Of a stretch of 64,000 nt of DNA, positions 1,624-29,463 are shown in pieces (positions within the stretch are counted from its first letter, which is position 1; the number at the start of each line of letters is the position of its first letter). The position numbers and the translations under genes are program-made. The DNA is taken from the IMG/VR virus record IMGVR_UViG_3300022602_000024, positions 1 to 64,000 of that record, one strand, 5' to 3'. The notes below the pieces were generated by a model. The model was not told where the DNA came from. It made no database searches and saw nothing but the letters and a program-made list of their open reading frames with translations.

Positions 1624-4600
1624 TTAGATTGGTAAGTATTGTCTCCACAATCTTACATTGGTGCTCGAATTAGCTGCAACAAACTGTAGTGTTGTTGTAC
1701 CACCGCTTGCAGCGACTGTTGCCACTCCCAAGTTACCACCTGTTGCTACAGTACCGTATACTACCACTTGTGCAGCGGTACCTGTTGACACAACCAATGC
1801 TTCCATTGTTTGATAGTTGCTACCATTTGTGGCCTGTATAATATACTTGGCACTACGGTATGCAGTAAACGAATCAAGTGTAGTTAGTGTGTTGGCACTA
1901 CTTACTGACACGTTAGCATCACCTGTTACCAAACCGCCTCCAGGTGGCATAATAAACACATTACCAGCACTACCTGTTCCAGTTGCAAATACGATACCAT
2001 TATTATCGTTGGCAACGTTGATATTTGTAAAACCAGTACTGCTACTTAGTGATTGTACTGTTGAAGTAGTTGTAAGCACACGAGTGTCAATCACGTCACC
2101 GCTTGCAGGTGCTTGGCTGAATGTTAATGTTGTTCCGCTTACTGTGTAAGCGTATCCAGCACCACCAATCTGCACAATACCGTTGATACTTACTAGTACA
2201 CCAGCAGTTGTTGTATTTACAGGCAAAGTAAATGCAGTTGTTGATCCATCACCACTGTACTGATTTTCTTGGATAATAGTAAATGATGTTGTAGCAGCCA
2301 CCCATTGTGATCCAGTGTACCATTCAATACCACCAGCAGTTGAGTTATAACGCAACATACCTTGTGTGTCTGTACCTAATCCGCTTGCAGTTGGACGTTG
2401 ACTGTTTGTACCAACTGGTAGTAAGATTGAGTCTGCACTATTGATTTGCAATTTAGCACCAGCAACCAGTGTACTGGTTGTTGCACTGTTACCAATCACA
2501 ACAGAATCGTATGTACCAGCATGGGCCCACAACAATGTCTTATCGTTCTTACCGCTCATGTACATGTCACTGTTAGCACCAGTTGACTGACTTACGTTAA
2601 TATTGGCACCTTGGCTGATGATTGCATTGTTACCAAAACTTGCACCGCCTGACACAACCATTGTACCGGTTGTTGTGGTAGCAATTGTGCTGTTAGTAGT
2701 AAATGTAGCAACAATGCTATTAGCATATGTACCGCCCACGTGGATTGCCACTGTCTTACCAACTGTGTCTGTACCAATTGTTAAATTACCAGCATCTACA
2801 TACAAGTAACCGTCATTGGCACCCGACATTGTCCATCCACTTGCAGCCCCAGTGAATCCAGAACCGTTAATACCCATGTCAATATAGTGAGTACTATCTG
2901 TACCGTTATCGGCAGTAGCAACAAAGTCTGTTGATGCGTTGTTACCAGAACTGTTGTTCTGTGCTTGGATCTGTACATAGTTGTTAGCCAATCCAGTAGC
3001 AACAATCAATGGGTTGCTCAAACCAATTGTGCTTTGTGCTGGGCCAAAGTAACCAGTACCCCCAATAACTGCGTTACCAGTAGCAAGTGTCAATCCACCT
3101 GCACCTGTAATTACCAATGCACCTTGTGTGCTGGAACTTGGTATAGCAGTTGTACCGCTTGTAATTACAACATTACCACCGTGTGTTGCTACACCGCTCG
3201 ATGATAGTGTAGTAAATGCACCAGTTGAAGCAGTTGTAGCACCAATTGTTGTTCCATTTATGCTACCACCAGTGATAACTGCATTAGCACTGCTTAGGTT
3301 GGTAACAACCAATGTGCCTGCCGAACCACTGATACTATTAACATTGCCTGAACTGAAGTTAGTGGCAACCAATGTTGTTACGTTTCCGTTTGTTACACCA
3401 AGTGTTGCCACGTTACCTGCTGCGGCTGTCAACGAAGTCAATCCAGTTACACTGCCGCCGGTTAACAATACGTTAGCACTACTGATATTGGTAAACAGAC
3501 CAGTTGTACCAGTAATGTTTGTAGCAGTTACATTACCACCTGTGATTTGTGCATTGGCACTACTGATATTGGTAAACAGACCAGTTGTACCAGTAATGTT
3601 TGTAGCAGTTATGTTACCACCAGTGATTTGTGCGTTGGCAGAACTAAAGTTTGTTCCTTGCAATGTAGTAAATGAACCACTAGTCATACCAGTTGTACTA
3701 CCGCCTGCGATTACTGCATTGCCTGAACTGAAGTTAGTTGCTTGTACTGTAGTTGCATTGATTGCAGTAATACCAGTGAATGTACCACCTGTCAACTGAG
3801 CATTACCTGTGCTGAAGTTTGTAGCCTGTAATGTTGTAAAGTTACCAGCAGCTGGAGTTGCATTACCAATAATACCTTGGAAACTTGCAGCGGTTAATGT
3901 TGTAAATGCACCAGTACTTGCAGTAGCATTACCAATTGGTGTTGCTTGTATGCCAGCACTAACTGTTATTGTGTTGGCTGATAGTGCACTACTGATCACT
4001 GCATTTGAAGCATATAGTGTGTTAACACCACTGATGTTACCACTGGAGCCACTTGTTATCAAGTTACCAACAGTGGCATTACCAGCAACATACAATGCAC
4101 CACCAATGCCCGCACCGCCTGTACCAGCAACTACTAGAGCACCAGTTGTAGTGCTTGAACTTGCAGTTCCAGAGTTGGCAACAATATTACCATTGGCAAT
4201 TATTGTACCAGTACTTGTAATGGTTGTAAATGCACCAGTTGAAGCAGTTGTTGCACCAATTGGTGTGTTGTTTACACTACCACCTGTGATTACTGCATTG
4301 CCTGTGCTGAAGCCAGTTGTGGCAACAGCATACGTTGAAGTTGTATTTGTAGAAACTACAGTTGCAATACTGGCTGCAGTTGAATACAATGTACCGGTAC
4401 TTGGTACATATGAAAGAGAAGTATTTGTAAACGCAGCTGCATTTGCACCTGCTACGTTACCAAATATTGGATAGAATGTTGCGCTACTTGTAGTATTTTG
4501 TTCTGATATAAAGTATGCAACATTGGCTTGTGCAGCACCGCCAGAAATCGTACCAGAGAATGTACCATAAATTGTGCCACCCACAAACAAACTACCGCTT

Positions 4601-9200: not shown

Positions 9201-11212
9201 TAGTTAGTTGCCGCCTGTATGCTTAATGCAGTCAAACTTTGACCACTTGTTAGTTTCACTCTAACATAAATTTCGTTTGTTGCAGTACTGCTGGAACTCA
9301 CTGTACCAAATGTACAGGTATAACTGCCACTGGATACTAAACTGTTGAATACTGCATTACCACCTAATGCACAACCATTGCTGCCATTACCGCCGCCACC
9401 TGATCCAGGAACACCCGATCCAGGATAAGCAGTGCCCATTGTTAGCCATCCGTTAAGTCCTGACGTTGAGTCAATGGTACTGCCAGGTAATGCTACCCAT
9501 AATCCAGCAATGGTTCCTGAATAACTGATGTTGAATTTACTGACCGCACTACGTACAAACTTGAATGTAAAGTACTGCGCTGTAGTCGAGCGTGTACTCA
9601 AGTTTGGACCAACTGGTAAAAATCCTGTACTATAATTTGTTACATCATACAGTAATTTTGCAGCCACATTAGTTGCATCTGTTTGATAGAATGGACCAGT
9701 AGTGCTATTAAATGCAGACTCTGTACCGGTATATGACGGAGTATCTGCTTGAGTTCCAGCATCAGGATTAACTATACGGTAAGGATTTCCTGACCCAGAT
9801 CCAACACTGCCAGCAATGGTCAAACTGGTTTCTTCAATTTGAGTACCAGTGCCAGTTTTATATAGTACATAAGTTGACGGAGCACTGAATGCCCAAGCAG
9901 TTGAGTTGTATCCGTTGTTGACTGTGATACTAGGGCCTTGAGTTCCTAGTGCATTACCAAATCCACTGGCAATATTGGATGTTGTTGTAAACGCAATAAC
10001 TGCTGTATTGTTTCTTGTAATTGGTGTAGTAACACCAGCAGTGGCATAACTTACCAATGCAGGAGCAGCAAACGCACCATTGGCACTGCTGGACGAAATC
10101 AAGTTAGTTGAGTTTGGATATGTGTCACCGCTGAGGTTTTGTACGTTGCCTTTTATAGTAAATCCAGCACTGGTTGTGAACATAGGAATAGTACTTGAAT
10201 AGGTAACAACATTACTACTCAACACCATGCTTGTTCCACTAAATGCTGGCACGCTAGGGGCGGAGCTATCGTAATACCAAGTGGCATTATTTGTACTTGT
10301 GCCTGTTGCTGAATCATAAAGGCTTACACGATTCCATCCTGCCGATGCTCCGCCAGTTGCAGTGGCATAGGTACTAAATACTGTCCAGAATCCAGCAGTC
10401 ACTGTTGATACCACATTGTGGTAATCTTGTACATTGTATATGTAAAGATTTCCATTGGTAGTGTTGCTGTTGCTACCAGTTAGTGTAACATTGCCATTAG
10501 GCACACCATTTACATAAGTGGTGACTGTTCCTGTACTACCTGGACCTACATTAGTGATAGGTGTGCCAATTGTGCTGAATGAACTTGCTCTAAGTGTGTT
10601 AACTAATGTACCGCCGGCTACGCTTAAGTTACCCCATCCCGAGTTATCAGTTTGTGTAAAGTTACACATTAGCCCACTATTGGTAGTTCCTACAGAAATT
10701 GTTGTGTTATTTGAGAAGCTGGGCGGACTTGGTGGTACTAGTTTACCTAATACATAATTTAATTCTGCAATGGCATCTGTTACATCTGTAGAACTTGTCA
10801 ACGTTACTGCATTACTAACAAATGATCCAGCTACATTTGATCCAAGGCTGATATTATTCCCAGTAAATCCGTCAAGTCCCGACAAGGTATTTAAATTACC
10901 AAAACTTAAATTACCATTGCCATCTGTATAGATGATATAGTTAGCCGAACCGCCCGTAATTTGTACATTGGCTATGCTACCAAGATTAAATTTATACCCC
11001 GAGTCCAGTGTAATTGCATTACCGAGAATATAAACATTGCCAACGTGTGCATTACCTATTACATCTAGAGTATAATTTGGGCTAGAGGTATTAACCCCAA
11101 CACGGCGATTGGTTACATCAAAGTATGCGACATTTGCGTCAATGGCAAGGTTAATACCCTGGCGTTCCAGGTTACTTGATAACATTGGCCCATTGATTCT
11201 TCCAATTGCCAT
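9200..11212 (-). CDS. Virion structural protein (670 aa)
   Basis: Long S/T/G/N-rich ORF with N-terminal MAIGRINGPML...RRVGVNTSSP, within the late structural operon. Confidence 0.72.
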   Translation of the reverse strand: MAIGRINGPMLSSNLERQGINLAIDANVAYFDVTNRRVGVNTSSPNYTLDVIGNAHVGNVYILGNAITLDSGYKFNLGSIANVQITGGSANYIIYTDGNGNLSFGNLNTLSGLDGFTGNNISLGSNVAGSFVSNAVTLTSSTDVTDAIAELNYVLGKLVPPSPPSFSNNTTISVGTTNSGLMCNFTQTDNSGWGNLSVAGGTLVNTLRASSFSTIGTPITNVGPGSTGTVTTYVNGVPNGNVTLTGSNSNTTNGNLYIYNVQDYHNVVSTVTAGFWTVFSTYATATGGASAGWNRVSLYDSATGTSTNNATWYYDSSAPSVPAFSGTSMVLSSNVVTYSSTIPMFTTSAGFTIKGNVQNLSGDTYPNSTNLISSSSANGAFAAPALVSYATAGVTTPITRNNTAVIAFTTTSNIASGFGNALGTQGPSITVNNGYNSTAWAFSAPSTYVLYKTGTGTQIEETSLTIAGSVGSGSGNPYRIVNPDAGTQADTPSYTGTESAFNSTTGPFYQTDATNVAAKLLYDVTNYSTGFLPVGPNLSTRSTTAQYFTFKFVRSAVSKFNISYSGTIAGLWVALPGSTIDSTSGLNGWLTMGTAYPGSGVPGSGGGGNGSNGCALGGNAVFNSLVSSGSYTCTFGTVSSSSTATNEIYVRVKLTSGQSLTALSIQAATN

Positions 11213-23216: not shown

Positions 23217-23241
23217 TAAATATGAATATATCATTTATTTA
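23217..23241. promoter_or_regulatory. Face-to-face TAAATA late promoters
   Basis: TAAATA on + at 23217-23222 and on - at 23241-23236, between divergent genes. Confidence 0.6.
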
Positions 23242-23254
23242 TGGGATCAAAAAT

Positions 23255-24094
23255 ATGGAAAATATCTCTGCTAATCCTTTAGCTAAACATTTTAGACAAC
23301 CTGCAATTTACATGAAATTGCCTAGTGGTGGTCGTTTTTGGAAAGAAGGCAGTTTAAATCTTCCCGCAACCGGCGATATACCTGTTTACCCAATGACTGC
23401 ACGTGATGAAATTACTATCCGTACACCCGATGCATTGATGAACGGTCAAGGTGTAGTTGATGTTATACAAAGTTGTTGCCCAAACATAATAGATGCGTGG
23501 AAAATGCCCAGTATTGACGTTGATGCAGTATTGCTAAACATACGTATTGCCAGTTACGGGGGCAATATGGATTTTGATACCAAATGTCCAGCTTGCCAAA
23601 ATGAATCAAGTTTTAGTTTAGACATGGGCAAGATAGTACAACAAATTTCTATGCCAAACTACGATGATCCTTTGGTATTTGACGGATTTAAAATAAAACT
23701 TAAACCACAACCGTATTTTGAAGTAAACCGTGTAAATCAAATCAGTTTCACTGAGCAACAGATACTGCGTTCAGTTAACGATAACAATATACCCGACGAA
23801 GAAAAGAAAACAATAACTGAAAAATATCTAAACAAGTTGATTGATTTAAACATCGAAGTTAGTTTAAACAGTACCAGTTCTATTACATTAGATGACGGTA
23901 CAGTAGTTACTAATATAATGCATATTAAAGAATTCTATGCCAATGCAGAATACAGAATATTAAAAGACATAGAAAAACGTCTCAAAGAGATCAATGATCA
24001 AGTGGCACTTGATCCAGTTGATGTTGTGTGCTCTGCTTGCGCTAACGAATATAAAATTCCGCTAACCTTTGACTACGCAAATTTTTTCGGTTAA
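23255..24094 (+). CDS. T4 gp26-like baseplate hub/tail assembly protein
   Basis: NPL..HFRQPAIY.KLPS.G, MTARDE, L.IR.ASYG, CP.C and C..C motifs, ending DYANFFG. ATG 23255 is preferred over 23222. Confidence 0.75.
   Translation: MENISANPLAKHFRQPAIYMKLPSGGRFWKEGSLNLPATGDIPVYPMTARDEITIRTPDALMNGQGVVDVIQSCCPNIIDAWKMPSIDVDAVLLNIRIASYGGNMDFDTKCPACQNESSFSLDMGKIVQQISMPNYDDPLVFDGFKIKLKPQPYFEVNRVNQISFTEQQILRSVNDNNIPDEEKKTITEKYLNKLIDLNIEVSLNSTSSITLDDGTVVTNIMHIKEFYANAEYRILKDIEKRLKEINDQVALDPVDVVCSACANEYKIPLTFDYANFFG
24082..24088 (+). other. Slippery heptamer T TTT TTC (putative -1 programmed frameshift)
   Basis: X XXY YYZ heptamer two codons before the stop. The -1 frame is open from 24073 through 24318. 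Confidence 0.65.
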
Positions 24095-24099
24095 GGCTT

Positions 24100-24318
24100 T
24101 TGTCTCTATCCAATGAAGAGATTGTAGCACAAATTGAATCAATGGAAAATGAGACAAAAGCCATTAAACAAGAAGCACTAAAAATGTGTTGGTATATGCG
24201 AGGTGGTCTTAGTTATACCGAATCTATGGATTTAAGTTTTACAGAACGTGAAATTATTGGTAAAATAATTAAAGAACATATAGAAACAACTAAAGAGTCA
24301 GGATTGCCATTCTTTTAA
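24100..24318 (+). CDS. gp51-like baseplate hub assembly protein, probably the frameshift extension of the upstream ORF
   Basis: CWYMRGGLSY.E..DLS..ERE.I..II.E motif. Only a TTG or an SD-less ATG is available as an independent start. Confidence 0.65.
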   Translation: MSLSNEEIVAQIESMENETKAIKQEALKMCWYMRGGLSYTESMDLSFTEREIIGKIIKEHIETTKESGLPFF

Positions 24319-24742
24319 GATGTACTGCGTACATCTGTTGTTTCGCTTATCAGCTCACAACACTATTCTTATTCGCTTAAGCGGATTAAGTTTCATCCAG
24401 ATTCCTCAGTCACACTTTGCCCGCACAGGGCAAAGATCACTTCATCCGAGTTCGGAACAGTCATTAGCGTTACTGCATTACAGAGGCGGTTGTCCGGTAC
24501 CTCGAGCAGTGTCTTTATCACAACGGCAACTAATATAATATACGCTAACATACTATATTAACCTGCACTATCGCTAGTGCGTCTTTTTAGCCTTAAATTC
24601 TTTTCAAACAATCAAACTAGAGCATTTAACCAGTCGTCATCCTTAACGGGTAGTGATTGAGTACTCTCAACGGCGAGAGATTTACGTCCCTGTGACCCTG
24701 GGTCCAGTTTTCATGTACGCACGAACTTGGCCTGCGTGAGCC
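24318..24742 (-). ncRNA. Candidate large structured ncRNA (~420 nt) 3' of the GIY-YIG gene
   Basis: At least 10 stems read by eye, one GNRA-capped hairpin, a nested multi-stem and an 8-bp loop-to-distal complement. No credible ORF. Family not recognised. Confidence 0.65.
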
Positions 24743-25177
24743 TTAACCGTTTAACTTATCTTTTATGTGGGAGCCATGTACACGGACCTGAATGTGTCCG
24801 TTATAATAATCTGCTGATTCTAAGACTTGGTGTCGAAATTGTTCTCTTGCTTCTATGTAGGAGCATTCTGCTTTGGATTTACAGTAAAAAAGTATTTCTC
24901 TAGTGAAGTTTTCTTTGCCTAGAGTTTCTACATCTTTGTTTAGTTCTATATTTGAGCCATAATATTCGCGCCAATCACTGTCAATTGTACCACGAATTTT
25001 CTTTTTTTTCTTTGTACCGTTTTTGAGTTTTACTGTTTTATATGTTGTTTTAGAGAATTTTGCTAGTTTCTTGCCTATATATTTACGATTAGATAGATTA
25101 TTTGTAATGAGGTATACAAACCCGACACAATCTTCGGGCAAGTCCTCTACAGTGATGTTTTGATAAAGCCATGACAT
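24743..25177 (-). CDS. Minimal GIY-YIG endonuclease (Seg-like catalytic domain only, 144 aa)
   Basis: GFVYLITN...RKYIGKK, Y.GS, F.REIL, conserved E (YIEARE) and N (YYNG). No appended DNA-binding domain. Confidence 0.85.
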   Translation of the reverse strand: MSWLYQNITVEDLPEDCVGFVYLITNNLSNRKYIGKKLAKFSKTTYKTVKLKNGTKKKKKIRGTIDSDWREYYGSNIELNKDVETLGKENFTREILFYCKSKAECSYIEAREQFRHQVLESADYYNGHIQVRVHGSHIKDKLNG

Positions 25178-25196
25178 GCATATTAGTTATCATATT

Positions 25197-26258
25197 TTAA
25201 TATAATTGTAATTTTTTTAATAGATTTTCGTTCTCATACAACATTCCGAGATTATATCTGTTTTGTTGATCGTTAAAAGGACTACACCATGCACCAGACG
25301 TAGATCTTCCAAAATTGGTATAATCGTTGCCCAACCCAAAGTGTACTACTTTGGTTTGCTTCAATCCCAAACGATTACACCAGTATGTTTGCTTATCCAA
25401 GTACTTTGTAACATTGTAATCTACAGGAAATTGATTGATAATATCTAATGCTAATCCTGCACTCAACCTGTTGCAAATATTTTCATCGTTGCTCATCTGC
25501 ATGGGGTCTTGCGGTTTTTCCTTACACATGCGCACCGCTATCTTAGCACATTGTACAGGAAAAGTTTTGCTAAAGCTAAAAGTAATTTGCCTAATACAAT
25601 CTGCACTTAGATCAATATCAACCGCACCGTTGCTATTGGGTAGATAGATAAAATCTAACAACAGATCTATACCCTGTTGATTGCATTGAGCTATTAACCA
25701 ATCTAAATCTTTGTGTTTGTCGCCAGTTAATGCAAAAGGATAGCTACAGATACAAACATCATTGGCACGTAAATCATCATCTTCGATGTACGCCCACTCT
25801 GCACCAATTTTGCTCCAGATATCCATATGCCACCAGTAGTCTCCGCGAAATACTCTAAATCTTTTGTTTTTGTTAAACAAATAAAAGTTTATAAAACTTT
25901 CTTGTGTTCCTGCACTAAAGCCTACATACTTAAACTGATCAAAATTTTGTAAATTGTATCTGGTGCCTGCGGCAATCCAACTTGGAAATTTTTCTTCAAA
26001 TTGCTTTACAATCCAAGGATTCAGCAAATGTTGCGCTAAATTCAAACTTTGAGTATAGTCAATAACTTCACTGTCTTTTATGCTGTTGCCACTGCTAAAA
26101 ATACTGCGATATCTAGATCTTACAGGCTCAAATTTATTATTATCAGGAAATGCCCATATATATTCGCCGGGTACATCTAGTGTGCGGTCTCCACTGGCTT
26201 TTGCAAGAACCCAGGCCAAGGTTCTAACTTGATTTATATCTGTGCTAAAATTCTGCAT
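25197..26258 (-). CDS. PLP-dependent fold-type I (aminotransferase-like) protein, paralog B
   Basis: LLLDFIYLP and FSFSKTFP motifs (Asp and Lys of the PLP site); aligns by eye with paralog A. Start placed at ATG 26258. Confidence 0.6.
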   Translation of the reverse strand: MQNFSTDINQVRTLAWVLAKASGDRTLDVPGEYIWAFPDNNKFEPVRSRYRSIFSSGNSIKDSEVIDYTQSLNLAQHLLNPWIVKQFEEKFPSWIAAGTRYNLQNFDQFKYVGFSAGTQESFINFYLFNKNKRFRVFRGDYWWHMDIWSKIGAEWAYIEDDDLRANDVCICSYPFALTGDKHKDLDWLIAQCNQQGIDLLLDFIYLPNSNGAVDIDLSADCIRQITFSFSKTFPVQCAKIAVRMCKEKPQDPMQMSNDENICNRLSAGLALDIINQFPVDYNVTKYLDKQTYWCNRLGLKQTKVVHFGLGNDYTNFGRSTSGAWCSPFNDQQNRYNLGMLYENENLLKKLQLY

Positions 26259-26704
26259 GCTTGTTGATAGTAGTTGTAGTCTTCTTCCCAGTCTGGGTCG
26301 TTGTTGTTTTTTTCGTGACGTGTTTTCAAGATCCAATATAGTACAGGATTGTACAAGTCAATTATAAATTTTCCATTGGGACCAAAAAACAAACAACTTG
26401 GGTATACATTGCCGTTTTCAGCAAAAAACTTGCTCTCCCATATTAACTCTTCTAAATTGTAGTCGTCTATGACAATAGATTCCAATTCAAAGCTGCGATC
26501 TTTGACAATTTTTCCATCGGCTACGACGGTATCACTGGGCAATTTGTCCCAGTGCTCGATAACTAATGAACAAGGACCTTCATCTAACTCTATGTCATAA
26601 TTATATTCGTTGTTGACCAAACCAGAATATAATTCTTGATTGGCCACAGTTATTTTACACTTTGGAGAGTCAACAATGTTTTTAAATATTATCTGCAGTT
26701 TCAT
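26234..26704 (-). CDS. Hypothetical protein (156 aa)
   Basis: Overlaps both flanking PLP-type genes by about 25 nt; function not recognised. Confidence 0.6.
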   Translation of the reverse strand: MKLQIIFKNIVDSPKCKITVANQELYSGLVNNEYNYDIELDEGPCSLVIEHWDKLPSDTVVADGKIVKDRSFELESIVIDDYNLEELIWESKFFAENGNVYPSCLFFGPNGKFIIDLYNPVLYWILKTRHEKNNNDPDWEEDYNYYQQACRILAQI

Positions 26705-27710
26705 TTTTTATTTTCTCAAACAAATCCCAATGATCAAAAATGCTGACCAAGCTAATTCTATTATTAAAATCAGCAGGATCTAATTGTAATTTATATACAT
26801 TCAATAAATTTTTCCTACTGTATAAATCCCAATCAGAATCGCCAATGGCAAACAATACAGAATCACTAGCAGTTAAGTTGAAGTATTCACATACTTGTTT
26901 TTGTTGTTGTATATAACGTTTATATATGTAGCTACAAGGAAATTGTTCTATTATCTTTGTTCCTATATATGCTGACAAATTGTTGTTGTAATTAATGCTA
27001 TCGTGTAGTTTTTGACCGTCAAATGTATCTTTTGTGTACCTTACACCTATGCGCAAGTTGGCTACAGGAAATGCTTTGCTTATACTAAATGCCACAGTAT
27101 CAATACAGCCTGCAGATAAATCCAAAGTGATGCCGCTACTAATGGGATAGTAACAACAATCAATCAATACAGGTACATTCAATGACTCGCATTGTTGTAT
27201 AATATTTAAAAACTCTGGGTGTGCTGATCCGGTATCACAAAAAGGCATGCTAATCACAACTGCATCATTTGATGCAATAGGATCGCTATCGGTGATAAAA
27301 CTCCAACTGGCACGGTTGCTGATCCATGTTTTTAAATGATAAAAGTATTCTCCGGAATAGCATCTAAACCGTCTTGTACAATGTCTAAAATAAAAACTAT
27401 CAAATGATTGTGTGGTTCCAGCACTGTAATCTGCTGAGTATTTTTCTAAACCTATTACGGTATTAGAATCGTGCCCTAAAATCCATTGAGTTATTTTCTT
27501 TTTAAATTCGTGTAACGCAGACCAATTTTGCAACTCGCTATACATACTTTGATCAAATAACTGCTTGATGTATTCTACAACTTGTGTATCTTTAACTGCA
27601 CGACTACCTTGAAATATATGATTTGCAGAAAATCTAGCATCAAAAAAGTTGCTGTGATTCTTTGTTGAAATCAAATAAGCCAACTGGCGAATGTTATGTG
27701 ATTTCGACAT
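26682..27710 (-). CDS. PLP-dependent fold-type I (aminotransferase-like) protein, paralog A
   Basis: VLIDCCYYP and FSISKAFPVANLRIG match the class I/II aminotransferase D..Y / S.SK.....G.RIG pattern. Start placed at ATG 27710, overlapping the gp46 stop. Confidence 0.68.
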   Translation of the reverse strand: MSKSHNIRQLAYLISTKNHSNFFDARFSANHIFQGSRAVKDTQVVEYIKQLFDQSMYSELQNWSALHEFKKKITQWILGHDSNTVIGLEKYSADYSAGTTQSFDSFYFRHCTRRFRCYSGEYFYHLKTWISNRASWSFITDSDPIASNDAVVISMPFCDTGSAHPEFLNIIQQCESLNVPVLIDCCYYPISSGITLDLSAGCIDTVAFSISKAFPVANLRIGVRYTKDTFDGQKLHDSINYNNNLSAYIGTKIIEQFPCSYIYKRYIQQQKQVCEYFNLTASDSVLFAIGDSDWDLYSRKNLLNVYKLQLDPADFNNRISLVSIFDHWDLFEKIKNETADNI

Positions 27711-29463
27711 CTGTATTATAACTTGTGTAACCGTTTTCTTTAACAACGTGCAAAGTATTGTTAACACGTCCTGCTAACTCGTCTTTGTGCGATACTAGCC
27801 AAATTGATTTGTTACTATCTCGGCTCATTTTCTTAAGAATACTCAATGAATTCTCAACTCCTGAGCTATCCATACCTGAATCTACCAACTCATCAATGAA
27901 CAACAAGTTGATGGGTTGATATAAACTTTCCCATACATCACGGAATGCCCATGACAAACTCAAGATAAGTCTGTTACGCTCGCCCCTACTCAAGTTGTCA
28001 AAGTCTAAGTCTCTACCCAGTTCAGTAATGGCTACAGTTAAGTCGTTGTTGAATTTTACAGTATGCGGCAAGCCTATACGATCTAAATATTGCCCTAATC
28101 TAGCATTAAGATAACTTAAATTTTGATCAATAATACGTTTACGTATAAATGAATCTTTGTTGGTCAACAGTTTTAACAAAAACTCTTGATGATTTTTGAT
28201 GTTGTCTAGTTCATTCATAACATCGTAACTGATTTCTTCTACTGCTTGCTCTTCCATGTCACGAATCTGATCGGCGTAAAGATCTGTTTCTTCTTGTTTG
28301 GCAGTTAACTGTGCAAGAATACTGCCCATGCTACTGCGATGCTCAAAAGCATCTGCTTCACTGTTGTAATAAACTTCAGGTTGTACACCTAGTTCTCCCA
28401 AGTCTGCCAGTGCTTGAGTATGTTCCATCCATTGAGTATTAGTGGCCAAGGCCTGTAGTGCAGCTTCTTGTAGTGCAGCACGCTTAGATTCCAACATTTT
28501 TTCGTGACTGTCATCATGTAGGTCCTGCCCGCAAGCATGACACTTGTGATCTTCTAATGCAGCAATGTCAGCTCGCAGTTGATCAATAACTTTTTCTTCA
28601 CGTTTTTCATCTAGTTCGCACCGTCGAATCCAGTTAGTCAGTTCAGTAATGGCTTTACGTTTTGTATTGTGGGCATTTAAGGCCTGGTGTGCACTCAATT
28701 CGGCTTCGATGTCTAGTTTGCTTAGTTCATCATATGCGGCCTGTAACGCATCTATATCGTCGGCGTGTTTTTTGAGCCATATCGACTGTGTGCGTTTTAC
28801 CTTATCAATTTGTTCTTGAATACGCTTATTAGCATCCGTGACTGCTTTGATTCGAAATTCCTCTTGGCTAATGGCATCCTTAGTTACTTTGTTTAATTCT
28901 TTAAGACGATCTGCTTTTTCGCTTAATAATGTAATGCCCAACAGTTGCTCAATGATAGTGCGTTGATCATTGGCTTTGAGTGCAAGGAATGGTTCAGTAT
29001 AAGTGTTTAATGCAACAATATGCTTAAACATATCATGACTCATGCCTAACATTCTTTCAATTTCTGCTTGCGTTTCTCTACTGTCACCTTGAGCATCATC
29101 GGTAATTTCTCGTTCAACATTACCGACAAAGAATTTCATTACTCCAGGTTTGCGGCCACGCTCAATTCTGTAATCAATACCGTCTTTTTCAAAATCAATT
29201 GTGACCAACATACCTTTGGTATTGGTTTTGTTGATTAGATTATCTTTTTTAATGTTAGTAAGTGCATTGCCGTATAGTGCATAGCTCAATGCATTAATGA
29301 TAGTGGTCTTACCAGTGCCATTACGTGCACCCGAATCATCGCCGCCTAAGTCTAAGTTTTCACCTAGCACCAAAGTTAAATCATTACGATCAAAGTTAAC
29401 GGCTTGTGTAGTATTACCTACACTCATAAAGTTTTTAACAGTAAGGTCTTTTATTTTAAACAT
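27694..29463 (-). CDS. gp46: Recombination endonuclease subunit (Rad50/SbcC-like ATPase)
   Basis: KNFMSVGN, Walker A NGTGKT, CHAC zinc hook, LSRGE signature and LLFIDE Walker B. Confidence 0.95.
   Translation of the reverse strand: MFKIKDLTVKNFMSVGNTTQAVNFDRNDLTLVLGENLDLGGDDSGARNGTGKTTIINALSYALYGNALTNIKKDNLINKTNTKGMLVTIDFEKDGIDYRIERGRKPGVMKFFVGNVEREITDDAQGDSRETQAEIERMLGMSHDMFKHIVALNTYTEPFLALKANDQRTIIEQLLGITLLSEKADRLKELNKVTKDAISQEEFRIKAVTDANKRIQEQIDKVKRTQSIWLKKHADDIDALQAAYDELSKLDIEAELSAHQALNAHNTKRKAITELTNWIRRCELDEKREEKVIDQLRADIAALEDHKCHACGQDLHDDSHEKMLESKRAALQEAALQALATNTQWMEHTQALADLGELGVQPEVYYNSEADAFEHRSSMGSILAQLTAKQEETDLYADQIRDMEEQAVEEISYDVMNELDNIKNHQEFLLKLLTNKDSFIRKRIIDQNLSYLNARLGQYLDRIGLPHTVKFNNDLTVAITELGRDLDFDNLSRGERNRLILSLSWAFRDVWESLYQPINLLFIDELVDSGMDSSGVENSLSILKKMSRDSNKSIWLVSHKDELAGRVNNTLHVVKENGYTSYNTDVEIT

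What the first reader, a model, noticed from the sequence alone, without database searches (positions are those of the whole stretch)
24318..25190. Minimal GIY-YIG nuclease followed directly by a ~420-nt ornate structured RNA: candidate phage nuclease-RNA system
Seen in sequence: in an otherwise gene-dense genome, 420 nt after the GIY-YIG stop (24743) lack a credible ORF but are packed with stems. In plus coordinates these are ACGCA/TGCGT (24717-24737), CTCTC/GAGAG (24664-24679), CAATCA/TGATTG (24609-24659) enclosing ACTAG/CCAGT, GCACTA/TAGTGC (24565-24580, GCGA GNRA loop on minus), a 12-bp AU-rich stem (24531-24560), a nested ACTGC-GAGG-CGG multi-stem (24472-24510), TCCG/CGGA (24445-24456), an 8-bp CTTTGCCC/GGGCAAAG (24415-24435) and an 8-bp terminal AGATGTAC/GTACATCT (24318-24336). 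G-U pairs and the GNRA loop favour the minus strand, co-oriented with the nuclease. The 144-aa nuclease has only the catalytic domain plus a basic insert (KLKNGTKKKKKIRG). Established: homing GIY-YIG enzymes such as I-TevI and SegA use an extra DNA-binding region, and TnpB/IscB nucleases use an adjacent structured RNA for targeting. Inference: the RNA may be a scaffold, guide or regulator for the nuclease, or an independent late ncRNA or ribozyme. I do not recognise the family.
Basis: partly seen in the sequence, partly recalled or inferred. Interest (0 to 1): 0.85.

Follow-up and report, generated by a model that had tools for sequence, protein, structure and literature searches.

The report
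Known orphan phage RNA beside nuclease
The gap after the small GIY-YIG nuclease gene encodes a real, roughly 425-nt pseudoknotted RNA whose first third is the orphan Rfam family Polynucleobacter-1; it is common in uncultured freshwater T4-like phages, nearly always follows a small nuclease gene, and shows no sign of being a guide RNA.

Summary
Window 24318-24742 (minus strand) has no ORF and encodes one structured RNA. In 52 non-redundant relatives, 106 nested pairs are 94% canonical and 51 show compensatory changes; slid controls give 35-43% and 0-3. Three pseudoknots covary.

The family is partly known. Positions 24606-24742 are a full-length Rfam RF01718 hit (Polynucleobacter-1, 103.5 bits). 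Weinberg et al. (2010) already placed this motif downstream of the same gene family. The most widely conserved part, however, is a 3' core of about 230 nt. That core also occurs with two other 5' domains that Rfam does not detect.

The ORF is a stand-alone SegE-type GIY-YIG domain (PF19835, phrog_447).

About 95% of RNA copies have this gene upstream on the same strand. Most of the rest carry a PD-(D/E)XK nuclease (PF24608) in the same slot, and no locus has both.

Against an obligate partnership: unrelated genes are often inserted between nuclease and RNA, close GIY-YIG homologs exist without the RNA, and there is no guide-like segment.

Function remains unknown. My best reading is an autonomous trans-acting RNA made from the operon's 3' end. 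An unexplained feature is two repeated modules that are identical at three variable positions in 150 of 151 RNAs.

The parts
24743..25177 (-). Stand-alone SegE-type GIY-YIG nuclease gene, 144 aa; stop codon at 24743-24745.
   Evidence: PF19835: E 2.8e-32, 112 bits, whole profile 1-123. phrog_447. Y22, Y33, E109 and N126 are invariant in 56 homologs. AF2 pLDDT 95 with a GIY-YIG-like beta-beta-[hairpin]-alpha-beta-alpha topology. BFVD top hits are SegE-like and Seg-like endonucleases.
24318..24742 (-). The whole structured RNA ('type A'), about 425 nt. It starts directly after the stop codon and ends at the stop codon of the convergent gene.
   Evidence: Conserved over its full length in relatives. 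106 nested pairs, 94% canonical, 51 with compensatory changes, against 0-3 in slid controls.
24606..24742 (-). 5' domain: a full-length member of Rfam RF01718, Polynucleobacter-1 RNA.
   Evidence: cmscan: 103.5 bits (gathering score 37), E 2.6e-21, model positions 1-141. Extra pseudoknot 24742-24740 x 24731-24729 (GC31/AU21 at 24741/24730).
24565..24580 (-). Hairpin closed by a GNRA-type loop (GCGA/GUGA).
   Evidence: 99% canonical, 3 of 4 pairs with compensatory changes.
24529..24562 (-). 13-bp AU-rich hairpin. Its loop (24547-24542) forms pseudoknot PK1.
   Evidence: 95% canonical, 12 of 13 pairs covary.
24465..24470 (-). 3' strand of PK1; pairs with the hairpin loop at 24547-24542.
   Evidence: All six pairs show double changes (e.g. 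CG45/UA7, GC36/AU15, UA48/GC4). Slid controls are 21-39% canonical. The same pseudoknot covaries in type B RNAs.
24472..24510 (-). Multi-stem around the near-invariant GAGGUACCGGACAACCGCCUC core. It includes the GGUACC palindrome at 24501-24496.
   Evidence: Helices 24510-24506/24476-24472 and 24503-24500/24486-24483 covary. The core 19-mer is exact in more than 120 viral and more than 120 metagenome contigs.
24520..24524 (-). GUUGU, 5' strand of pseudoknot PK2; pairs with ACAAC at 24493-24489.
   Evidence: Counted pairs: 24522/24491 UA50 CG2; 24521/24492 GC50 GU1 AU1; 24520/24493 UA48 AU2 GC2. Multi-site compensation in L030 and L072. The outer two pairs are inferred from sequence and were not counted.
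24440..24463 (-). Module a: (A/G)UGAC, a loop, then motif X (24450-24440, CUC-R-GAU-R-A-W-G).
   Evidence: Repeat of module b. X and Y are identical at three variable positions in 150 of 151 RNAs, spread over 7 haplotypes.
24415..24435 (-). GC-rich 8-bp hairpin between the two modules.
   Evidence: 96% canonical; mostly invariant, one covarying pair.
24390..24414 (-). Module b: GUGUGAC, a loop, then motif Y (24402-24390, UCU-R-GAU-R-A-W-AC).
   Evidence: Loop a and loop b are complementary in several lineages (UUCC/GGAA in the window; AUUGU/ACAAU and CUAU/AUAG elsewhere).
24362..24389 (-). Variable linker: length-variable, often a small CGCUUCGC-type hairpin, absent in some members.
   Evidence: A4 columns about 520-600. 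No match elsewhere in the window beyond chance.
24337..24361 (-). Hairpin whose loop carries the conserved UGAGCGAnAGCGAAA motif.
   Evidence: The closing helix has 6 of 6 pairs with compensatory changes; the inner GC/GC pairs covary.
24318..24336 (-). Terminal 8-bp hairpin with a conserved CGNAG loop.
   Evidence: 96% canonical, 6 covarying pairs. On the + strand it scores as a terminator-like site for the convergent baseplate genes.
24100..24318 (+). Convergent 72-aa gene, followed upstream by a gp26-like baseplate gene (23222-24094). This marks the 3' boundary of the RNA slot.
   Evidence: Syntenic in most relatives at 51% mean identity. PF12322 for the 290-aa neighbour.

Best explanation
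Shown. Window 24318-24742 (-) is a gene for one large, compactly folded non-coding RNA of an uncultured freshwater T4-like phage. Its 5' third is a Polynucleobacter-1 (RF01718) domain. Its 3' half is a more widely conserved core. That core contains two pseudoknots, an invariant GAGGUACCGGACAACCGCCUC stem-junction, and two tandem homologous GA-rich modules flanking a GC hairpin.

Inferred. The RNA has no room for a promoter of its own. It always abuts the stop codon of whichever ORF precedes it. So it is most likely made by read-through of the leftward operon (gp46 ... nuclease) and then acts as a folded, trans-acting particle. Candidate roles are a protein-binding or sequestering scaffold or a ribozyme-like RNA; a guide role is unlikely. 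The two modules, kept identical, suggest a pseudo-twofold architecture or two equivalent binding sites.

The upstream 144-aa protein is an intact stand-alone SegE-type GIY-YIG DNA endonuclease. It probably acts on DNA without needing the RNA. The two are linked by shared transcription and a fixed syntenic slot, and possibly by co-inheritance.
For: RNA reality and strand.

Modular architecture: a shared 3' core with three different 5' domains.

RNA type is not specially tied to the nuclease. It switches about 11 times on the GIY tree and 12 times on the gp46 tree. The window is type A, while its closest syntenic relatives L036 and L212 are type B.

No promoter space: the RNA abuts the stop codon of the preceding ORF, GIY or inserted gene alike. 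No convincing sigma-70 site lies before it.

Independence from the GIY-YIG:
- Unrelated ORFs are inserted between them in 11 of 70 and 22 of 95 loci.
- The same RNA follows an unrelated PD-(D/E)XK nuclease in 11 loci.
- Three or four RNA loci have no nuclease upstream.
- GIY proteins about 80% identical occur without the RNA (L045, L046, L060).
- 501 isolate phage records have homologs, but none has the RNA.

No guide-like segment.

Nuclease intact.
Against: The function itself is untested, and no transcript data were available.

Co-occurrence is very high: about 95% of RNAs have a GIY gene upstream and about 98% have some small nuclease.

GIY and PD-(D/E)XK are mutually exclusive in the same slot: 282 loci against 11, with none having both. 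This is the pattern expected if 'a small endonuclease next to this RNA' is itself the selected unit.

GIY-RNA adjacency (about 75-85% direct) is tighter than gp46-GIY adjacency.

The GIY is more conserved than gp46: 75% against 64% mean identity, higher in 53 of 67 loci. That could reflect an additional binding partner.

Shared ancestry inflates all co-occurrence counts, and the IMG/VR and metagenome samples overlap.
Confidence: 0.42

Rival explanations
1. Nuclease-RNA functional unit. The RNA binds the small nuclease, regulates it (for example as inhibitor, timer or activator), or is its scaffold. Alternatively the nuclease drives preferential inheritance of the RNA gene in mixed infections, as T4 SegB does for the tRNA region.
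For: About 95-98% co-occurrence, always the same order and strand. In-situ, mutually exclusive replacement of GIY-YIG by PF24608 PD-(D/E)XK directly upstream of the RNA. Near-universal occupancy and strong conservation of a nuclease that lacks a DNA-binding domain. Two identical modules could be sites for a dimeric protein.
Against: Two unrelated folds would have to recognise the same conserved RNA core. Unrelated genes inserted between them are tolerated. RNA type does not track the GIY tree better than the gp46 tree. Close GIY homologs exist without the RNA, and RNAs without a nuclease. The wider family lacks the RNA. The nuclease is fixed rather than sporadic, unlike classical free-standing homing genes.
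Confidence: 0.3
2. Cis-acting 3' element. The structure works only on its own transcript or locus, for example as a 3'-end stabiliser of the operon mRNA, or as an insulator/terminator between convergent early and late transcription units.
For: It sits at the convergence point of two transcription units. The terminal hairpin scores as a terminator for the + strand. The RNA always follows directly after a stop codon.
Against: About 425 nt with three covarying pseudoknots, invariant 20-mers and exchangeable 5' domains is far more than a terminator or exonuclease block needs. It is conserved regardless of which ORF precedes it.
Confidence: 0.13
3. RNA-guided GIY-YIG nuclease. The RNA supplies DNA-target specificity by base pairing.
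For: The nuclease lacks a DNA-binding domain and is adjacent to a large RNA.
Against: There is no constant-length hypervariable segment at either end. The variable linker is internal, 5-75 nt, hairpin-forming and dispensable. No complementary targets were found in the window or in cis. The nuclease family works without this RNA in most phages. There is no transposon context.
Confidence: 0.04
4. Not an RNA gene. The gap would be a decayed C-terminal (DNA-binding) part of a longer Seg-like endonuclease, or another degraded ORF.
For: Full-length Seg enzymes carry a C-terminal domain. In some relatives the GIY ORF runs 45 nt further into the gap.
Against: There are 6-18 stops per frame. Indels are not in multiples of three. 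51 base pairs show compensatory changes. There is a strong Rfam covariance-model hit.
Confidence: 0.01

Closest known systems
Polynucleobacter-1 RNA motif (Rfam RF01718; Weinberg et al. 2010, PMC2864571)
   Same: Window 24606-24742 is a full-length, high-scoring member. That gene is the same family as the window's GIY-YIG (37% identity, E 3e-19). The authors' own alignment file already carries a 'tail' with extra helices and a pseudoknot. Function is unknown in both cases.
   Different: The Rfam model stops after 141 nt, while the RNA here is about 425 nt. The most widely conserved part is the 3' core, which also occurs with two other 5' domains that Rfam does not detect. The two GA-rich modules, the UGAGCGAnAGCGAAA hairpin and the terminal hairpin are outside the published consensus. 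In 2010 no phage source was known; here nearly all copies are on T4-like viral contigs. The gene was not then recognised as a GIY-YIG nuclease.
T4 SegB and the T4 tRNA/small-RNA gene cluster (free-standing Seg-type GIY-YIG next to structured-RNA genes; recalled from the literature, not re-read here)
   Same: A Seg-type GIY-YIG gene embedded beside structured-RNA genes in a T4-like phage. This offers a way to work: the nuclease biases inheritance of the adjacent RNA locus.
   Different: Here the protein has no C-terminal DNA-binding domain. It is nearly fixed and more conserved than gp46 rather than sporadic. No cleavage site or inheritance bias has been tested.
Group I introns with an intron-encoded GIY-YIG enzyme (I-TevI in td)
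   Same: A GIY-YIG ORF physically joined to a large pseudoknotted RNA with GNRA loops in a T4-like phage.
   Different: No group I covariance model matches, even at E <= 10. No interrupted host gene exists, because the downstream genes are convergent. Only 20 nt lie upstream of the ORF, so the RNA lies on one side only.
OMEGA systems (TnpB/IscB with omega-RNA; HEARO RNA)
   Same: A compact nuclease gene adjacent to a large conserved structured RNA.
   Different: Different nuclease fold (GIY-YIG or PD-(D/E)XK, not RuvC/HNH). No transposon ends. No terminal guide segment. The RNA is separable from the nuclease gene.
Large orphan 'ornate' RNAs of phages and prophages (GOLLD, ROOL; cryo-EM multimers, bioRxiv 10.1101/2024.12.08.627333) and phi29 pRNA
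   Same: Size, multiple pseudoknots, phage association and unknown function. The complementary loop a/loop b pairs and palindromes (GGUACC, GAUUAAUC) resemble the loop-loop contacts that build pRNA rings or RNA cages. Resemblance only.
   Different: No sequence or covariance-model similarity. Oligomerisation is untested. T4-like phages are not known to use a packaging RNA.

Membership tests
Rfam RF01718 Polynucleobacter-1 RNA | Covariance-model score above the curated gathering score, over the whole model | tested here: met
   103.5 bits against 37; model positions 1-141 of 141; E 2.6e-21.
Rfam RF01718 Polynucleobacter-1 RNA | Consensus helices maintained by compensatory changes in relatives | tested here: met
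   All domain-1 helices are 86-100% canonical, with 2-5 covarying pairs each, in 52 sequences.
Rfam RF01718 Polynucleobacter-1 RNA | Location downstream of a GOS11034 / PSSM2_218-like gene (the authors' context note) | tested here: met
   The upstream ORF is 37% identical to PSSM2_218, E 3e-19.
GIY-YIG nuclease superfamily, SegE-type domain (PF19835) | Profile match above the curated cut-off | tested here: met
   112 bits against 25; profile 1-123 of 123.
GIY-YIG nuclease superfamily, SegE-type domain (PF19835) | Catalytic motif residues (GIY Tyr, YIG Tyr, Glu, Asn; Arg) | tested here: met
   Y22, Y33, E109 and N126 are invariant in 56 homologs. The canonical Arg position is not obvious; R93 is nearly invariant.
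GIY-YIG nuclease superfamily, SegE-type domain (PF19835) | GIY-YIG fold | tested here: inconclusive
   The AF2 model (pLDDT 95) has beta-beta-[long hairpin]-alpha-beta-alpha order. BFVD hits are Seg-like endonucleases at E down to 1e-18. Foldseek found no PDB chain at E < 0.001, not even I-TevI.
Free-standing or intron-encoded homing endonucleases (Seg, I-TevI type) | Separate C-terminal DNA-binding region giving site specificity | tested here: not met
   144 aa, covered end to end by the catalytic-domain profile. Homologs are mostly 130-160 aa.
Free-standing or intron-encoded homing endonucleases (Seg, I-TevI type) | Sporadic presence or absence among close relatives, with fast decay | tested here: not met
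   Present in about 95% of RNA-bearing loci. 75-80% mean identity, above gp46.
Free-standing or intron-encoded homing endonucleases (Seg, I-TevI type) | Site-specific cleavage of the nuclease-less allele and biased inheritance | not testable with these tools
   Needs cleavage assays and phage crosses.
Group I intron | Match to group I covariance models; flanking exons of an interrupted gene | tested here: not met
   No group I hit at E <= 10. The downstream genes are convergent, and only 20 nt separate the upstream gene from the ORF.
OMEGA / RNA-guided nucleases (TnpB, IscB) | RuvC (+/- HNH) nuclease; omega-RNA with a terminal variable guide at a transposon end | tested here: not met
   The protein is GIY-YIG. 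The variable stretch is internal, length-variable and dispensable. No targets were found.
Intrinsic terminator only | A single GC-rich hairpin followed by a U-run is the only conserved element | tested here: not met
   The terminator-like score applies only to the + strand at 24318-24336. The other 400 nt are conserved and covary.

The most novel reading that the evidence does not exclude
The RNA and a small DNA endonuclease form one selected two-part unit, with the endonuclease being GIY-YIG in most phages and, interchangeably, a PD-(D/E)XK enzyme in a few. The RNA would be a cofactor or regulator of the nuclease, or a cargo whose inheritance the nuclease drives. That would be the first RNA-associated GIY-YIG system. 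In addition, the RNA's two modules, kept identical at every variable position, may reflect an unusual pseudo-symmetric or self-associating fold.
Probability: 0.3. Interest if true: 0.8.

Novelty: new member of a known kind. Interest (0 to 1): 0.55.

Why it matters
Polynucleobacter-1 has been an orphan Rfam motif since 2010. It had no organismal home beyond one bacterial genome and lake metagenomes.

This window and its relatives change that picture in five ways:
- They place the motif in uncultured freshwater T4-like phages.
- They show it is only the 5' third of a roughly 425-nt multi-pseudoknot RNA.
- They show the truly conserved unit is a 3' core shared by at least three 5'-domain variants.
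- They identify the long-noted upstream gene as a stand-alone GIY-YIG nuclease.
- They show that gene can be swapped for a PD-(D/E)XK nuclease.

RNAs of this size and complexity usually turn out to be ribozymes or RNP scaffolds. The orphan therefore becomes experimentally approachable through co-expression, binding, structure probing and cryo-EM. It also provides a clean test of whether a minimal nuclease and a large RNA cooperate.

Tried and rejected
- Group I intron, hammerhead, tRNA/tmRNA, or any other Rfam family for 24318-24605. There were no hits; the best were cow-rumen-2 at E 3.5 and no tRNA. The UGAUGAGCGA...CGAAA motif looks hammerhead-like, but its flanks pair with each other (6 of 6 covarying pairs), which is the wrong topology.
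- Coding or pseudogene reading of the gap. Rejected.
- Isolate phages with the RNA. blastn of the locus and of the RNA alone against 50,697 phage records found nothing. Melnitz, P-HM1 and phiM12 loci were negative by Rfam and nhmmer.
- Bacterial genomes. The core 19-mer gave 15 hits in 185,579 species genomes. Twelve were chance hits in high-GC MAGs, and three were true hits on phage-like MAG contigs.
- A pattern taken from the Polynucleobacter genome copy, searched in IMG/VR. The 21-mer gave 0 hits. The 15-mer gave 75 hits, none confirmed by nhmmer or tblastn.
- A common complementary partner for motifs X and Y. None was found in cis in 151 loci, nor as 11-mers or longer in the window. My window pattern was badly designed and is uninformative.
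- A Watson-Crick X:Y helix. It shows no double changes, and by eye the two motifs as they read in type C RNAs cannot form it. Not adopted.
- Co-evolution of RNA type with the GIY tree. It was no better than with the gp46 tree.
- Foldseek against the PDB for the nuclease. No significant match. phmmer against PDB sequences: none.
- Metagenome scan for transcript-like short contigs. All contigs were 1 kb or longer and looked genomic, so they give no evidence on expression. They were used only for linkage counts.
- I did not pass a typed 655-column structure string to the count of structure pairs. Pair counts and slid controls were computed in scripts instead.
Full report
**1. What is there**

On the minus strand, a 144-aa ORF (24743-25177) is followed by 425 nt (24318-24742). 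That stretch runs up to the stop codon of a convergent 72-aa gene (24100-24318, + strand), which sits beside a gp26-like baseplate gene. gp46-like and tape-measure-like genes lie nearby, so this is a T4-like myovirus. The window has no tRNA. The three minus-strand frames of the gap contain 18, 12 and 6 stops. Independent gene calls on related contigs leave the same 440-480 nt empty.

**2. The RNA is real, and the evidence is comparative**

Folding energy alone is unremarkable: z = -1.57, and 6 of 100 shuffles fold as well.

The evidence comes from relatives. A search with the ORF's protein found at least 587 viral contigs. In most of them the whole gap is conserved at 68-82% identity. A 17-sequence alignment already gave 92 predicted pairs, 44 with compensatory changes.

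In 52 non-redundant full-length relatives (A4), the results were:
- 106 nested pairs are 94.4% canonical.
- 51 pairs combine at least 85% canonical cells with double changes.
- Sliding the 3' partners by 1-3 columns gives 35-43% canonical and 0-3 such pairs.
- G-U cells outnumber A-C cells 597 to 122, so the minus strand is the RNA strand.

The TCCG/CGGA stem is not (48% canonical).

A mutual-information scan added three pseudoknots:
- 24742-24740 x 24731-24729 in domain 1.
- The loop of the AU-rich hairpin (24547-24542) x 24470-24465, where all six pairs show double changes.
- GUUGU (24524-24520) x ACAAC (24493-24489). Its three inner pairs were counted; the outer two are inferred from the sequence.

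**3. The family is partly known**

cmscan puts 24606-24742 in Rfam RF01718, Polynucleobacter-1 RNA. The score is 103.5 bits against a gathering score of 37, over the full model. Nothing else in Rfam matches the remaining 290 nt.

The one paper in the library that names the motif is Weinberg et al. 2010 (PMC2864571). It calls it a candidate RNA of unknown function from lake and estuary metagenomes and one Polynucleobacter genome. It says most copies lie downstream of GOS11034 genes 'with possible homology to PSSM2_218 of cyanophage P-SSM2', and that no purified phage had it.

PSSM2_218 is 37% identical to the window's ORF (E 3e-19), so this is the same gene-RNA pair. The authors' Stockholm file also carries a 'tail' subfamily with extra helices and a pseudoknot. 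Its flanks for the Polynucleobacter genome copy contain recognisable homologs of the 3' core.

The basic gene-RNA association is 16 years old, but its function is still unknown.

**4. What appears to be new**

*(a) Source.* Essentially all copies found here are on T4-like viral or viral-like contigs from freshwater. The order is gp46 - (0-3 variable genes) - nuclease - RNA - convergent 72-aa and gp26-like genes. Among 185,579 bacterial and archaeal species genomes, only three contigs truly carry the RNA, and they look like phage contigs binned into MAGs. No isolate phage in INPHARED has it.

*(b) Architecture.* The most conserved unit is not the Rfam domain. It is a 3' core of about 230 nt, from GCCGUUG to the terminal hairpin. 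This core occurs with three different 5' domains:
- Type A carries the RF01718 domain. The window is type A.
- Type B has a different domain of about 190 nt that Rfam does not detect.
- Type C has a different, longer 5' part.

Among the loci held, counts were A 97, B 93 and C 8; this set is redundant.

Type changes about 11-12 times on either the nuclease tree or the gp46 tree. The window (type A) and its closest syntenic relatives L036 and L212 (type B) differ in type, although their 379-aa neighbours are 75-78% identical. So the 5' domains are exchanged by recombination.

*(c) Two tandem modules.* The modules (24463-24440 and 24414-24390) flank the GC hairpin. Their motifs X (CUC-R-GAU-R-A-W) and Y (UCU-R-GAU-R-A-W) carry the same bases at all three variable positions in 150 of 151 RNAs, across seven haplotypes. 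In type C both motifs read ...ACAUGAA. In the Polynucleobacter clade both read ...AGCGAAAG. Identity covariation of this kind is not explained by X:Y Watson-Crick pairing. No complementary partner was found in cis. The loops of the two modules are complementary in several lineages. Together these point to a pseudo-symmetric fold, two equivalent sites for one partner, or self-association. This remains unexplained.

**5. The protein**

PF19835 (SegE_GIY-YIG) covers residues 3-129 with the whole 123-position profile. The PHROG family is phrog_447, misnamed 'NAD synthetase'.

Y22, Y33, E109 and N126 are invariant in 56 diverse homologs. The AF2 model (pLDDT 95) has the GIY-YIG strand-helix order with a long basic beta-hairpin (residues 40-66) inserted after the YIG strand. 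Viral predicted structures of Seg-like endonucleases match it. No PDB chain does.

The hairpin is a family trait and does not mark RNA-linked members.

The family is large: 2138 representatives at 50% clustering, mostly 130-160 aa. It is a common gene of T4-like cyanophages, rhizobiophages, Melnitz and others. There it sits in other contexts, with the next gene following directly.

There is no DNA-binding extension, so it is not a typical site-specific homing enzyme.

**6. How tight is the link?**

Starting from the RNA (exact core 19-mer):
- In IMG/VR, I analysed the 80 loci listed (L084-L163) of the 120 fetched. 70 of 75 loci with usable upstream sequence have the GIY gene upstream on the same strand. 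Of those, 59 are adjacent and 11 have an insert of about 1.0-1.2 kb.
- In JGI metagenome contigs the figure is 95 of 100, with 73 adjacent and 22 with an insert.
- The two samples overlap, and both are affected by shared ancestry.

Starting from the GIY: nearly all of the 80 best loci have an RNA downstream. L045, L046 and L060 do not. Their proteins are about 80% identical but sit in a different context followed by a membrane protein. L074 cannot be judged because its contig ends.

The inserts are diverse, non-endonuclease ORFs of 73-88 aa up to about 240-360 aa. The RNA always abuts the stop codon of whatever ORF precedes it.

Among the GIY-less RNA loci, the ORF directly upstream is usually a 171-172-aa PF24608 'phage putative PDDEXK endonuclease'. 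Over 323 loci, 282 carry the GIY, 11 carry PF24608 and none carries both. Three loci (L088, L414, L144) have neither.

The GIY is more conserved than gp46: 75% against 64% mean identity, and higher in 53 of 67 loci of the RNA-first set.

**7. Interpretation**

The data fit two readings.

*Independence (preferred, 0.42).* The RNA is an autonomous, trans-acting folded RNA produced from the 3' end of the operon. The nuclease acts on DNA by itself. Their association is transcriptional and syntenic. The supporting points are:
- Inserted genes between them are tolerated.
- The same RNA core pairs with two unrelated nuclease folds.
- RNA-only and GIY-only loci exist.
- The wider protein family lacks the RNA.
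- The RNA does not co-inherit with the GIY specifically.

*Functional unit (0.30).* Near-universal occupancy of the slot by a small endonuclease, mutually exclusive replacement in situ, tight adjacency and unusual conservation are what one expects if nuclease plus RNA is itself selected. The RNA could then be a regulator or cofactor, or the nuclease could drive inheritance of the RNA gene. The closest precedent I know is T4 SegB beside the tRNA genes (from memory, not re-read).

*Less likely readings.*
- A guide-RNA mechanism is unlikely (0.04). There is no terminal, constant-length variable segment, no targets and no transposon context.
- A purely cis-acting 3' element (0.13) does not need this complexity.
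- A decayed coding region is excluded.

**8. Verdict**

This is a genuine, well-supported structured RNA and a new member of a known but functionally orphan family. The analysis assigns it to phages, enlarges and re-centres its architecture, and identifies its gene partner. It does not show what the RNA does.

No step had to be referred. I did not need to read any protein through a stop codon.

Noticed in passing
window 24390-24402 and 24440-24450; alignment A4: Two repeated motifs of the RNA (X and Y) carry identical bases at three variable positions in 150 of 151 RNAs, across seven haplotypes. Other clades change further positions in parallel. No Watson-Crick explanation was found.
   Followed up: partly
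L124, L135, L179, L185, L304, L315, L346, L352, L362, L363, L386: In these RNA-bearing loci a 171-172-aa PF24608 PD-(D/E)XK putative endonuclease occupies the slot of the GIY-YIG gene. It is usually directly upstream of the RNA. No locus has both nucleases (0 of 323).
   Followed up: partly
L007, L017, L021, L034, L047, L059, L061, L071 and others (between GIY stop and RNA start): The junction between the nuclease gene and the RNA is a hot spot for inserted accessory ORFs. Examples are 276-342-aa proteins with GCSxxxG...HPG motifs that look like SGNH hydrolases (by eye; Pfam found nothing), a 73-aa QSregVF_b protein, and an 88-aa zinc-ribbon-like protein.
   Followed up: partly
window 25197-26336 and 26682-27767 (-), with 26234-26704 between them: Two paralogous proteins of 379 and 361 aa, about 30% identical via relatives, lie between gp46 and the nuclease gene. 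The only family signal is a weak aminotransferase class I/II match, on the 361-aa protein alone. The same trio occurs in L036 and L212.
   Followed up: no
window 24318-24336: The RNA's terminal hairpin, read on the + strand, scores as an intrinsic-terminator-like site for the convergent baseplate genes. One hairpin may therefore serve both strands.
   Followed up: no
window 10802-10815 (-) and 24468-24481 (-): A 14-mer of the RNA (GTAATGCAGTAACG) recurs once elsewhere in the window on the same strand. About 0.2 such matches are expected by chance, so it is probably coincidence.
   Followed up: no
L208, L212 (NZ_JBBAKG010000003.1 and NZ_JBBAKG010000001.1, 'Haliscomenobacter sp.' MAG EUL_031): Two contigs of 148 and 183 kb in a bacterial MAG carry gp46, the nuclease, the RNA and baseplate genes in phage order. 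They look like T4-like phage genomes binned into the MAG.
   Followed up: no
GenBank records of cyanophages and rhizobiophages (e.g. L082, L083, L219): Members of this GIY-YIG family (phrog_447, T4-GC 213) are widely annotated as 'NAD synthetase'. This looks like a propagated misannotation.
   Followed up: no
L051, L052, L062, L064, L070, L075, L076: In these loci the nuclease ORF ends 45 nt later (stop at 3477), while the type B RNA hit starts at about 3437. The ORF's 3' end therefore overlaps the start of the RNA.
   Followed up: no
L081 (Melnitz, MZ577097.1) 3498-3938: In the OM43 phage Melnitz, the closest isolate homolog (50% identity) lies just downstream of the nrdB-like gene, separated by one small ORF, and is followed by a 148-nt gap with no Rfam or nhmmer hit. 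From memory, this recalls the position of denA next to nrdB in T4.
   Followed up: no
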